Shown here: one piece after another, positions 40,399 through 42,103 of the stretch
Numbering within the stretch: the first letter of the stretch is position 1
Layout of the letters: each line of letters opens with the position of its first letter
Assembly: GCF_030144855.1 (NCBI RefSeq)
Contig: NC_082731.1
Location: forward strand, 26,102,001 to 26,166,000
Reading direction: 5' to 3'
DNA from: Hypanus sabinus
Taxonomy: Eukaryota
Length of the DNA: 64,000 nucleotides
Notes under the pieces: generated by a model
The model's database searches: none
Told to the model about the DNA's origin: nothing
Seen by the model: only the letters and a program-made list of their open reading frames with translations
Program-made: the position numbers and the translations under genes

Positions 40399-40890
40399 AT
40401 GAGGGTCGACGTTTATGTCTATGTCGTCCTGTATTGTCTAACAGGTGTGTATTCTGTGGCTTATCGCTCACTCATTACCTGCTGTTACTAGGAGAATTTA
40501 TGAATCTCTGCCTGTGGACCATTTTATTATTTTCTGCCCTTTCTTTATTGACAGGCGTGCGGTCCGACATCGTGTTGAAACAACCCGAGTCAGCAGCTGT
40601 GAAGGCGGGAAATCCCACAGACTGACCTGTGCAGTCACTGGGTTCAGCCTCGACAGCTATAAGATGAACTGGGTGAAACAGATCTCCGGGAAAGATCTAC
40701 AGTGTGTGGCGCATATATCGAGGAGCGGTAAGAAATACTACCCGCCTGAAGTCCAGAGCCGGTTCTCTGTTTCCAATGATAGCAGCACCGTCTATCTGCA
40801 AATAAACAACATAAGACTGGACGACACTGCCACCTATTACTGTGCGAGAGGCACAGTGAGAGAATACGGGACTGGACCGGGACAAAAGCT
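40399..40890 (+). pseudogene. IgH-like V segment C (1-bp frameshift in FR1) with intact 23-RSS
   Basis: Leader MRVDVYVYVVLYCLT-G (40399-40444), exon 2 from 40555; DIVLKQPESAAVKAG then -1 shift to SHRLTCAVTGFSLDSYKMNWVKQ...YYCAR (ends 40851); CACAGTG-23-ACAAAAGCT. Confidence 0.88.
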
Positions 40891-41230
40891 CAAGGAGAGA
40901 GTCTTTCCTTAGAGCGCTGAGGGAAAGATCAGCGGTAATCCCCACAGTTTTATCCCGATCATTCTGGACACAACCTGTCCTCCACGCAATGGAAGGCGAT
41001 TTCTCAGCGACGACTACTGAGAAGGGATGTTGGATGGATCGATCGAAAAGCTCACCTGGACACTTCAGAGAGCAGCTCGGAGTTAAACGCCGTGAGTGAG
41101 AATAGAGTGAACGTTCGACCTTGTCAGGTGTCGGGCCTTCGAGACAGTAAATGGTTAGGCTAGGAGGAACAATGATGAGAGTCACTTTGGTGTTCGAGTG
41201 CGATTAAACTATGCTGGGAATCAATGAGAG

Positions 41231-41314
41231 GTTTTTTGTACAGCAGTGTATCACAGTGGCTACTGTACTGGTTGGAACATTTTAAGAGATGGCGGCTTCC
41301 ACATAACAAAGACC
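41231..41314 (+). other. IgH D1-type segment (from 41259, GCTACTGTACTGGTTGGAA) with good 5' 12-RSS and decayed 3' ~23-RSS
   Basis: GTTTTTTGT-12-CACAGTG; 3' nonamer ACAAAGACC at 41306-41314 but no recognisable 3' heptamer. Confidence 0.65.
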
Positions 41315-41621
41315 TACTGCAACAAAACATTTAAATTGGGCTTTCGGGCTCTTCCGCCGGCCTTCATTCCCCGGGACCCCGGGATTTAAATCAGATTCCA
41401 AGTGGATCATTTGAGACTAGGTAGAGGATCCACTGGAGATGTGTTTGGAAGGGAACGGTGCGAATGAGGAGTAACGGTCAGTGGAAGACCAAGAAAGGTT
41501 CCATTTGGTTATATCGTCTCTACTGCAGGACTGGGATTACCGAAATTGAGGGCGGGTGGAGTTAATTTATTGAGGTCGCTGGCAGCGATCTACTACATTT
41601 CGGAATGGATGGGATAAACGT

Positions 41622-41685
41622 GCTTTGTGTCCTACGCTGAGACACGATGATATGGACCGCAGCGGTAGGGAGCCGAACAGAAATT
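41622..41685 (+). other. IgH D2-type segment (ATATGGAC, 41650-41657) with degenerate 12/12 RSS
   Basis: GCTTTGTGT-12-CACGATG | D | CGCAGCG-12-ACAGAAATT. Confidence 0.65.
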
Positions 41686-42010
41686 GTTTCCGACAAATTA
41701 GCTTCTGCAGCGCAGTCTGTCTCCACCATTACCGTTCCGCTGCATCCCAAAGTCAAATCAGTGAATCCCGACTCGGACTGCTATGACAAATGTCTATTTC
41801 TGGGTAATGAGAAGCCCATAATGATTCGACTCCATTTCTGGAGGATGATGGTGTCCATAGACGGAAAAACTCTGAAAGTGCCTCCTTTATTCACATGACA
41901 AGAGGAGCCAAGCTCAGAGTTTGGGCTCTAAATTCAGGATATGGCCACACCTGCTCCACACAGGGATAATGCTGATACGTTTCTGAGATTATTGGATGTG
42001 ACGGCCGTGC

Positions 42011-42103
42011 AGATATTGCACTGGTTGAGTGGTGACACTGAACAGTGTGATGGTCTTGAATTCTGAGGCGGAGGAACCTCGTTGACAGTGACTTCAGGTA
42101 AGA
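42011..42103 (+). pseudogene. IgH J pseudogene (42050-42097) with 23-RSS and splice donor
   Basis: GLEF*GGGTSLTVTS (WGxG Trp TGG>TGA; TVTS ending is IgH-type); AGATATTGC-23-CAGTGTG; donor GTAAGA. Confidence 0.85.

What the first reader, a model, noticed from the sequence alone, without database searches (positions are those of the whole stretch)
40399..42103. Complete C-less IgH V-D1-D2-JH mini-cluster embedded ~5 kb upstream of the TCR D segments
Seen: V 23-RSS, D1 (12 / decayed ~23), D2 (12/12) and JH (23-RSS, F*GGGTSLTVTS, GT donor), spaced ~400 bp apart. No Ig constant exon was found before D-delta at 47.4 kb; that interval is mostly CR1 and the repeated segment. Established: this RSS pattern and spacing is the cartilaginous-fish IgH cluster layout. 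Inference: this is a fossil of a whole-cluster insertion of IgH into the TCR locus, with the JH inactivated by a single TGG>TGA change at the WGxG Trp.
Basis: partly seen in the sequence, partly recalled or inferred. Interest (0 to 1): 0.8.

Follow-up and report, generated by a model that had tools for sequence, protein, structure and literature searches.

The report
Dead antibody-type V-D-D-J cluster beside TCR-delta
A decayed antibody heavy-chain-style gene cluster (V, two D and one J segment, no constant region) sits 5 kb upstream of the T-cell-receptor delta D segments of a cartilaginous fish; it is the most complete of several copies in the window and shows how antibody V genes came to be used by T-cell receptors.

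Summary
On the + strand at 40399-42112 lie a VH-type V gene with a 23-RSS, a D1 (good 5' 12-RSS, decayed 3' 23-RSS), a D2 (12/12, both heptamers broken) and a J with a GT donor. Gaps are 408, 375 and 393 bp, as in shark IgH miniclusters. No Ig constant exon lies before D-delta1, 5.3 kb downstream.

Every part is damaged, not only the J:
- V has a 1-nt deletion in FR1.
- J carries TGA at the Trp/Phe position of [FW]GxG.
- The J nonamer is too weak to tell a 12 from a 23 spacer.

It is not a one-off insertion. It is the third, oldest copy of a block duplicated in tandem. Units at 8.7-10.2 and 25.9-27.5 kb are collinear with it through V and D2 but lack D1 and J. Two open V genes (3.5 and 16.6 kb) keep only V plus 23-RSS.

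Contigs about 95% identical, spanning the V RSS to the J, exist in three related organisms. The J core matches a roughly 15-copy J family there.

Best reading: a pseudogenised IgH-type minicluster, the source material of TAILV/VH-delta-like V genes. The scan's first-stage notes report similar fossils elsewhere in this genome. Interest is moderate.

The parts
40197..40398 (+). Upstream/promoter region shared with the four paralogous V units
   Evidence: Collinear alignment with 3075-, 16230-, 8640- and 25905-
40399..40444 (+). Leader exon (MRVDVYVYVVLYCLT), followed by GT donor
40555..40851 (+). VH-type V exon, pseudogene. It has a 1-nt deletion after 40610 relative to all four paralogues, and the leader frame stops at 40623-40625. 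The FR2 Trp is replaced by Cys. Both canonical Cys and YYCAR are kept.
   Evidence: Pfam V-set E 7.5e-13. The 60 best PDB matches shown are antibody-type constructs, almost all named as VH/heavy chain, VHH nanobody or scFv; no T-cell receptor is among them.
40852..40890 (+). V 23-RSS: CACAGTG, 23-nt spacer, ACAAAAGCT
   Evidence: The spacer is homologous to those of V1 and V2.
41231..41258 (+). D1 5' 12-RSS (nonamer 8/9, heptamer 6/7 with CAC kept)
41259..41275 (+). D1 coding, 17 nt (3' limit inferred)
   Evidence: Bounded by the 5' heptamer and by a nonamer 23+7 bp further on
41276..41314 (+). D1 3' 23-RSS remnant: heptamer AACATTT (4/7), 23-nt spacer, nonamer ACAAAGACC (8/9)
   Evidence: Nonamers of 8/9 or better occur at about 2e-4 per bp on this strand.
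41622..41649 (+). D2 5' 12-RSS, decayed (nonamer 7/9, heptamer CATCGTG 5/7)
   Evidence: homologous to units A and B
41650..41657 (+). D2 coding ATATGGAC (paralogues: ATATGTCC, ATATGTAC)
41658..41685 (+). D2 3' 12-RSS, decayed (CGCAGCG 5/7, nonamer 6/9)
   Evidence: Register set by paralogues with CACAGAG-12-ACAGAAACT at 10011-10038 and 27283-27310
42011..42049 (+). J RSS: heptamer at 42043-42049 (6/7); nonamer 5/9 at both 12 and 23 spacing, so the spacer class is undetermined
42050..42097 (+). J coding GLEF*GGGTSLTVTS. TGA at 42064-42066 is at the [FW] position of [FW]GxG. The segment ends in phase 1.
42098..42112 (+). GT splice donor and first 15 nt of intron. Together with 42063-42097 it is at least 90% like a roughly 15-copy J family in related genomes.
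   Evidence: depth 263 against 17 in X1, and about 9 against about 1 in the X14 raw reads; flanks differ beyond 42063 and 42112
42815..44612 (-). LINE fragments (reverse transcriptase pieces) filling part of the J to D-delta interval
   Evidence: weak RVT_1 match
8685..10187 (+). Paralogous unit A. The V is dead (ATG changed to ATA, RSS heptamer CGTAGTG, stops). D2 is in 12/12 format with both heptamers 6/7 and the 3' nonamer 7/9 (5' nonamer only 5/9). No D1, no J.
25950..27447 (+). Paralogous unit B, 93.6% identical to unit A, with the same anatomy
3489..3823 (+). Open VH-type V1 with 23-RSS (CACAGGG, perfect nonamer); no D or J behind it
16646..16980 (+). Open VH-type V2 with a perfect 23-RSS; no D or J behind it
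47346..47425 (+). TCR D-delta1: perfect 12-RSS, 13-nt D, 23-RSS
47755..47830 (+). TCR D-delta2: 12-RSS, 9-nt D, 23-RSS

Best explanation
This is a pseudogenised, constant-less IgH-type minicluster (leader-VH / D1 / D2 / JH) in the TCR-delta locus.

Shown:
- It is the oldest and most complete copy of a tandemly duplicated cassette family in this window.

Inferred:
- The ancestral cassette was a shark-type heavy-chain cluster with the RSS pattern V-23 | 12-D1-23 | 12-D2-12 | 23-J and about 400-bp spacing.
- Once it lay upstream of D-delta (12/23) and J-delta (12), the V 23-RSS could join D-delta directly. The cassette's own D, J and C were then redundant and decayed or were deleted.
- Sister cassettes show the later stages: V plus D2 only (units A and B, V also dead), and V plus 23-RSS only (V1 and V2, open reading frames, the TAILV/VH-delta-like end state).
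- In this genome the copy does nothing. V is frameshifted, J has a stop, and three of the four inner heptamers have lost the CAC needed for RAG cleavage.
For: - Anatomy and spacing.
- The V is of antibody heavy-chain type, not TCR V type: the 60 best PDB matches shown are antibody constructs (VH/heavy chain, VHH, scFv) with no TCR among them, E 5e-63 to 2e-26; Pfam V-set.
- Units A, B and C are collinear from the promoter through V, the V RSS and the spacer, and again through D2 and about 280 bp beyond. The D2 3' 12-RSS is well formed in A and B.
- All five V units share promoter, leader, intron, V and RSS spacer.
- The block 2-11540 matches 14964-28750 at about 90%, and 29.6-46.6 kb is a third, more diverged copy in which unit C holds the place of A and B.
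- The ~400-bp spacing and the V, two D, one J content match nurse-shark IgH miniloci (PMC2435157).
- No Ig C exon lies before D-delta1.
- The J differs from the TCR J segments of the window. It has TGA where they have Phe, it ends in TVTS rather than xVxP, and it is only 62-69% identical to four of the five (J61 did not align in register).
- The J core plus the first 15 intron bases match a roughly 15-copy J family in related genomes.
- Single-copy contigs about 95% identical, spanning V RSS-D1-D2-J, occur in three other organisms. Their lesions are lineage-specific, as expected for neutral decay.
Against: - No bona fide IgM/IgW cluster of this or any shark could be aligned, so 'IgH-derived' rests on grammar, spacing, VH type and J type, not on collinear homology.
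- The J spacer class (23 or 12) cannot be read.
- The D1 block is present only in unit C, so it could be an insertion there rather than a loss in A and B.
- The multi-copy J family seen in the reads might be further C-less fossils rather than working IgH clusters. A first-stage note, s1-146758, reports such pseudo-JH segments about 71 kb upstream.
- No RNA or rearranged-DNA data were available.
Confidence: 0.8

Rival explanations
1. Only the V gene is real. It is a TAILV-like TCR-delta V pseudogene, and the D1, D2 and J are chance RSS-like motifs in its 3' flank.
For: The D2 RSSs of unit C are weak on their own (5/7 heptamers). The D1 3' heptamer is 4/7. The J nonamer is 5/9.
Against: - The D1 5' 12-RSS has 2 mismatches in 16, on the right strand and at the right distance.
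- D2 is homologous to paralogous D2 segments with good RSSs.
- The J motif plus GT donor plus heptamer occurs nowhere else in 64 kb except at true J segments.
- The J core matches a multi-copy J family.
- The three gaps are 375-408 bp.
Confidence: 0.05
2. A hybrid cassette: an IgH-type V and D segments followed by a TCR-type J (12-RSS, Phe-Gly-x-Gly) rather than a JH.
For: The nonamer fits 12 and 23 spacing equally badly. GGGT and LTV are shared with the window's TCR J segments, at 62-69% identity for four of the five. A first-stage note, s1-187785, reports an IgH V wired to TCR-type D and J elsewhere in the genome.
Against: - A D2 3' 12-RSS needs a 23-RSS partner.
- TGA is one step from TGG (Trp) but two from TTY (Phe).
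- The TVTS ending is unlike the xVxP endings of the TCR J segments.
- The reads show a distinct J family with its own intron start.
Confidence: 0.07
3. A cassette that still works, here or in close relatives. V-D-D-J would assemble in cis and the J donor would splice to C-delta about 28 kb downstream, giving a TCR-delta chain with a wholly antibody-type variable domain.
For: - V RSS, D1 5' RSS, the leader, the splice sites and the J donor are intact.
- A contig of organism C carries the extra C after 40610, which would keep the V in frame.
- All segments have the orientation of D-delta, J-delta and C-delta.
Against: - In this genome there is a V frameshift, a J stop and broken D2 heptamers.
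- In organism B 9 bp at the J heptamer are missing.
- Divergence of the orthologous contigs (about 5%) shows no sign of constraint.
- No RNA holder was listed.
Confidence: 0.05
4. An assembly artefact that placed an IgH pseudocluster next to TCR D-delta.
For: The region is repeat-rich and tandemly duplicated. The contigs of other organisms span only 40.8-42.3 kb and do not bridge to D-delta.
Against: Four paralogous units lie in the same window in a regular block structure. The flanks of unit C are homologous to the flanks of units A and B. First-stage notes describe many such cassettes along this locus.
Confidence: 0.03

Closest known systems
Cartilaginous-fish IgH minicluster (VH-D1-D2-JH-C; nurse shark IgM, PMC2435157)
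   Same: One VH, two D and one JH about 400 bp apart. 23-RSS on V. D1 12/23 and D2 12/12 (this RSS pattern is from my own knowledge; the figure is not held). J with a GT donor in phase 1.
   Different: No constant exons within the 5.3 kb that follow, where nurse-shark C-mu1 lies 6.3-6.8 kb from JH. Instead TCR D-delta and J-delta follow. Every segment is damaged.
[quoted passage not shown] 2019, cited in PMC12227049; paper not held)
   Same: IgH-like V genes with a 23-RSS lying inside the TCR-delta locus. V1 and V2 of this window fit that description, and unit C is their paralogue.
   Different: As far as I could read, TAILV is described as a V segment. Here the V still carries its own D1, D2 and J.
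VH-delta of frogs, birds and platypus, and the TCR-mu model (Parra et al. 2012, PMC3457774)
   Same: VH-type V genes inside TCR alpha/delta loci, explained by translocation of gene segments between IgH and TCR-delta.
   Different: Different vertebrate class. Those loci hold V genes only; no relic IgH D or J beside them is reported in the abstract I read.
IgH / TCR alpha-delta linkage in elasmobranchs, the AgR complex (Flajnik et al. 2025, PMC12227049)
   Same: [quoted passage not shown] Some V exons lie between loci or are intermediate in sequence.
   Different: That paper states that the V(D)JC of each isotype cluster together. A C-less V-D-D-J 5 kb from D-delta is not described in the sections I read.
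NAR-TCR (doubly rearranging TCR-delta; Criscitiello et al. 2006, from my own knowledge)
   Same: A V-D-J cassette without its own C inside the TCR-delta locus, whose J has a splice donor.
   Different: NAR-TCR V is a single-domain NAR type and splices to a supporting V-delta exon. Here the V is a conventional VH, and no supporting V lies between J and D-delta.

Membership tests
Cartilaginous-fish IgH minicluster | VH-type V gene with split leader and 23-RSS | tested here: met
   the best PDB matches shown are antibody VH/VHH/scFv constructs with no TCR among them; RSS 7/7 and 7/9 with a 23-nt spacer
Cartilaginous-fish IgH minicluster | Two D segments, D1 12/23 and D2 12/12 | tested here: met
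   D1 is 12 (8/9, 6/7) and 23 (4/7, 8/9). The D2 12/12 register is confirmed by paralogues. The signals are decayed, so the format is met but the function is not.
Cartilaginous-fish IgH minicluster | One JH with a 23-RSS, WGxG and a splice donor | tested here: inconclusive
   Motif, donor and heptamer are present. TGA stands at the Trp codon. The nonamer is 5/9 at both 12 and 23 spacing.
Cartilaginous-fish IgH minicluster | Segments about 400 bp apart | tested here: met
   Gaps of 408, 375 and 393 bp, against 'about 400 bp' in PMC2435157
Cartilaginous-fish IgH minicluster | Own constant-region exons downstream of JH | tested here: not met
   No C1-set match or signature in 42.1-47.35 kb. TCR D-delta1 follows at 47346.
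Cartilaginous-fish IgH minicluster | Collinear DNA similarity to working IgM/IgW clusters of the species | not testable with these tools
   No vertebrate genome collection is available. The only indirect evidence is that FR3 plus RSS and the J core are multi-copy in related genomes.
TAILV / VH-delta (IgH-like V used by TCR-delta) | IgH-like V with 23-RSS inside the TCR-delta locus, upstream of D-delta in the same orientation | tested here: met
TAILV / VH-delta (IgH-like V used by TCR-delta) | Expressed joined to D-delta, J-delta and C-delta | not testable with these tools
   No RNA run was listed as a holder. The V is frameshifted in this genome.

The most novel reading that the evidence does not exclude
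In the ancestor, and possibly still in close relatives where the V appears to be in frame, this cassette assembled VH-D1-D2-JH in cis and spliced the JH donor straight onto C-delta. That would be a TCR-delta chain with a complete antibody-type VDJ, a shark counterpart of TCR-mu. The fossil would then record a former receptor type, not merely a by-product of V capture.
Probability: 0.1. Interest if true: 0.8.

Novelty: new variant of a known kind. Interest (0 to 1): 0.5.

Why it matters
IgH-like V genes in TCR-delta loci are known: TAILV in sharks and VH-delta in frogs, birds and monotremes. How they arrived there is inferred, not seen.

This window holds a graded series in one place:
- a full V-D1-D2-J cassette without C,
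- V-D2 cassettes,
- bare V genes with a 23-RSS.

All are homologous and all lie upstream of D-delta. This is direct structural evidence that whole heavy-chain miniclusters, not single V segments, were the unit of transfer or duplication. It also suggests that the 23-RSS of VH made the cassette's own D and J dispensable next to a 12/23 D-delta.

The series gives concrete targets (the V, the D1 12-RSS and the J donor) for repertoire sequencing in related species. If the first-stage notes hold, it also shows that such fossils are frequent along this locus.

Tried and rejected
- **Protein homologues.** The search for homologous proteins with the V found nothing. The database seems to hold no vertebrate V regions, so no shark IgM/IgW comparison was possible.
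- **RNA evidence.** No listed run holds the stretch as RNA. This is not evidence of silence.
- **Reading the TGA in other reads.** Read laying is limited to one call, and it listed only the first 40 of 172 differences, ending at 41007. The letter at 42066 in the orthologous contigs and in the multi-copy J family could not be read. None of the four runs is the source individual; all are about 95% alike.
- **A J remnant in unit A.** MAFFT suggested one. Local alignment scored below the mean of shuffled queries, so I rejected it.
- **Remnants of D1, D2 or J behind V1 and V2.** None was found by sensitive BLAST.
- **Octamer ATGCAAAT upstream of the V units.** None is present.
- **My first register for the D2 3' RSS of unit C** (CAGCGGT-12-AGAAATTGT). 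Paralogue alignment replaced it with CGCAGCG-12-ACAGAAATT.
- **My first idea that the J has an 'extra codon' relative to the TCR J segments.** This was wrong: the TGA aligns with their Phe codon.
- **Papers.** Deiss 2019 and Ott 2021 are not held. The RSS pattern of shark D1 and D2 is given from memory.

Full report
**What is there**

All parts lie on the + strand.
- A leader exon at 40399-40444 has an ATG and a GT donor. An intron of about 110 bp follows, then a 297-bp V exon at 40555-40851.
- From FR1 onwards the V reads SHRLTCAVTGFSLDSYKMNWVKQISGKDLQCVAH...TATYYCAR.
- It matches Pfam V-set at E 7.5e-13.
- In the Protein Data Bank the 60 best matches shown are all antibody-type constructs, almost all named as heavy-chain variable domains, nanobodies or scFv (E 5e-63 to 2e-26). 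No T-cell-receptor chain is among them.
- The V is followed by CACAGTG, a 23-nt spacer and ACAAAAGCT.

Three further elements follow downstream, after gaps of 408, 375 and 393 bp.
- **D1.** The 5' 12-RSS is nearly consensus (nonamer 8/9, heptamer 6/7 with CAC kept). The coding stretch is 17 nt. The 3' signal has a decayed heptamer (4/7) but a nonamer, ACAAAGACC, at 8/9 and exactly 23 bp further on.
- **D2.** This is 8 nt (ATATGGAC) in 12/12 format. Both heptamers have lost the CAC (CATCGTG, CGCAGCG).
- **J.** The J at 42050-42097 reads GLEF*GGGTSLTVTS. It ends in phase 1 before GTAAGA and has a 6/7 heptamer directly 5'.

**Is it more than chance?**
- RSS-like sites with at most three mismatches number 17 in the window, against 0-5 in 20 block shuffles. 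All the strong ones fall at V, D or J segments.
- The J peptide pattern occurs six times in 64 kb. Five are TCR J segments downstream of D-delta; the sixth is this one.
- The weak D2 signals are vouched for by homology (see below).

- The V is itself a pseudogene. Relative to all four paralogues it lacks one base after 40610, so the leader frame runs into TGA at 40623. The FR2 Trp of the LEW motif is Cys.
- The J spacer cannot be called. The nonamer is 5/9 at both 12-bp and 23-bp spacing.
- The TGA aligns with the Phe codon of the TCR J segments, that is, with the [FW] position of [FW]GxG. TGG is one change away and TTY is two. With the preceding Phe and the TVTS ending, a JH (xFWGGGTSLTVTS) is the more economical ancestor. 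This is inference.

**The surroundings**
- D-delta1 (perfect 12-RSS, 13-nt D, 23-RSS) starts at 47346 and D-delta2 at 47755. TCR J segments with 12-RSS and FGxGT follow at 49.3, 53.0, 54.5, 59.4 and 61.5 kb.
- A first-stage note places C-delta 6.4 kb beyond the window end. I did not check this.
- Between the J and D-delta1 lie 5277 bp. These hold antisense LINE fragments (weak RVT_1 match) and a segment repeated at 31.1-33.9 kb.
- None of the 20 longest open frames in that interval, on both strands, matches an Ig domain. No C1-set signature ([YF]xCx[VAI]x[HN]) occurs in any frame.
- In nurse shark C-mu1 lies 6.3-6.8 kb from JH (PMC2435157). The constant region would therefore have lain about where the TCR D segments now are.

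**It is one of a family**

Self-comparison shows that 2-11540 and 14964-28750 are about 90% identical tandem copies of one block. The stretch 29.6-46.6 kb is a third, much more diverged copy.

Each young block holds two V units.
- An open VH-type V with a near-perfect 23-RSS: V1 at 3489-3823 and V2 at 16646-16980. Both read GKGLEWLA...YYCAG.
- About 5-9 kb further on, a dead unit: A at 8685-10187 and B at 25950-27447.

Units A and B align collinearly with the finding (unit C) in two stretches:
- from 200 bp upstream of the leader through V, RSS and spacer;
- again through D2 and about 280 bp beyond.

In A and B the V has lost its ATG, has stops, and has a CGTAGTG heptamer. The D2 (ATATGTCC or ATATGTAC) keeps heptamers CACAATG and CACAGAG (both 6/7) and a good 3' signal, CACAGAG-12-ACAGAAACT; its 5' nonamer is only 5/9.

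The 190-bp D1 block is absent from A and B. No J is detectable in them: a hint in the MAFFT alignment scored below shuffled controls. Behind V1 and V2 nothing of D1, D2 or J remains.

All five V units share promoter, leader, intron and RSS spacer. The window thus holds a series: V-D1-D2-J, then V-D2, then V alone.

**Other genomes**
- No run at 99% identity was offered, so the source individual could not be re-read.
- Three organisms (coded A, B, C) each hold one contig of 1.45-1.52 kb at single-copy depth and about 95% identity. Each spans 40781 or about 40835 (by run) to 42293, that is, V RSS, D1, D2 and J. The fossil is therefore older than the split of these taxa.
- Lesions differ by lineage. 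Organism B lacks 9 bp at 42039, within the J heptamer, and 10 bp at 41791.
- A 98-bp contig of organism C has an extra C after 40610. That would keep the V in frame, although a close paralogue cannot be excluded.
- The stretch 42063-42112 covers the J from the codon before the TGA to 15 nt into the intron. It has depth 263 against 17 in organism A, and about 9 against about 1 in the raw Hi-C reads of organism B. The flanks differ on both sides, and the 3' flank is uniform (agreement 0.96). The letters before 42063 end in GACTA, which with the C at 42063 would read Asp-Tyr before the Trp/stop codon. So a family of about 10-15 J segments at least 90% like this one exists. It may be the working IgH clusters or further fossils; I could not tell which.
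- FR3 plus RSS (40758-40909) is likewise multi-copy.

**Mechanism**

Shown:
- the anatomy;
- the paralogy;
- the absence of a C exon;
- the lesions.

Inferred:
- An IgH-type minicluster came to lie upstream of D-delta.
- Its V 23-RSS is compatible with the D-delta 5' 12-RSS, so V-to-D-delta joining bypasses the cassette's own D and J.
- These, and the C, then decayed or were deleted while block duplication multiplied the cassette.
- The copy nearest D-delta kept the most parts.

In this genome the unit is inert.

**Known context**
- IgH-like V segments in the shark TCR-delta locus (TAILV), Ig-TCR-delta trans-rearrangements, and the close linkage of IgM, IgW and IgNAR clusters to TCR alpha-delta are published (PMC12227049).
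- VH-delta and the translocation model are published for tetrapods (PMC3457774).
- I found no description of a C-less V-D-D-J relic next to D-delta in the held library. The two most relevant papers are not held, so this is not proof of novelty.
- First-stage notes of this scan report similar fossils elsewhere on the same chromosome. They are unchecked.

**Verdict**

This is a new variant of a known kind, and the interest is moderate.

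Noticed in passing
window 9996-10038 and 27268-27310: The D2 segments of dead units A and B keep the 12/12 format with both heptamers 6/7 and a good 3' signal. Under the 12/23 rule the only legal downstream partner for that 3' 12-RSS in the window would be the J at 42050, if its RSS is a 23-RSS. A and B are 93.6% identical, so this preservation may simply reflect recent duplication.
   Followed up: partly
window 40700-40708; units A and B at the aligned position: Units A, B and C share Gln-Cys where V1 and V2 have the Glu-Trp of the FR2 'GLEW' motif (the VH/VL interface Trp). 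This is either a shared derived change of one subfamily or an old variant. It recalls the interface changes of single-domain V regions.
   Followed up: no
window 3300-3380 and 16450-16530: V1 and V2 have ATA where unit C has its ATG. Both have an in-frame ATG about 30-40 nt upstream, giving a longer leader (MSK...IPYFCLLLLCLPG). Their start codon needs checking with RNA.
   Followed up: partly
window 42264-42400: High-copy element in related genomes: depth about 370-480 against 8-17 single-copy. It begins about 165 bp after the J donor. It is probably a SINE-like repeat and was not classified.
   Followed up: no
window 2-11540, 14964-28750, 29625-46600: A tandem block duplication of about 13-17 kb carries one open V, a LINE and one dead V-D2 unit. 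The LINE copies at 34.2-36.8 and 42.8-44.6 kb are inverted relative to those at 6.0-8.5 and 22.4-24.8 kb.
   Followed up: partly
window 47346-47830: The two D-delta segments are about 400 bp apart and have homologous 23-nt spacers. This is the same spacing as in the IgH-type cassette.
   Followed up: no
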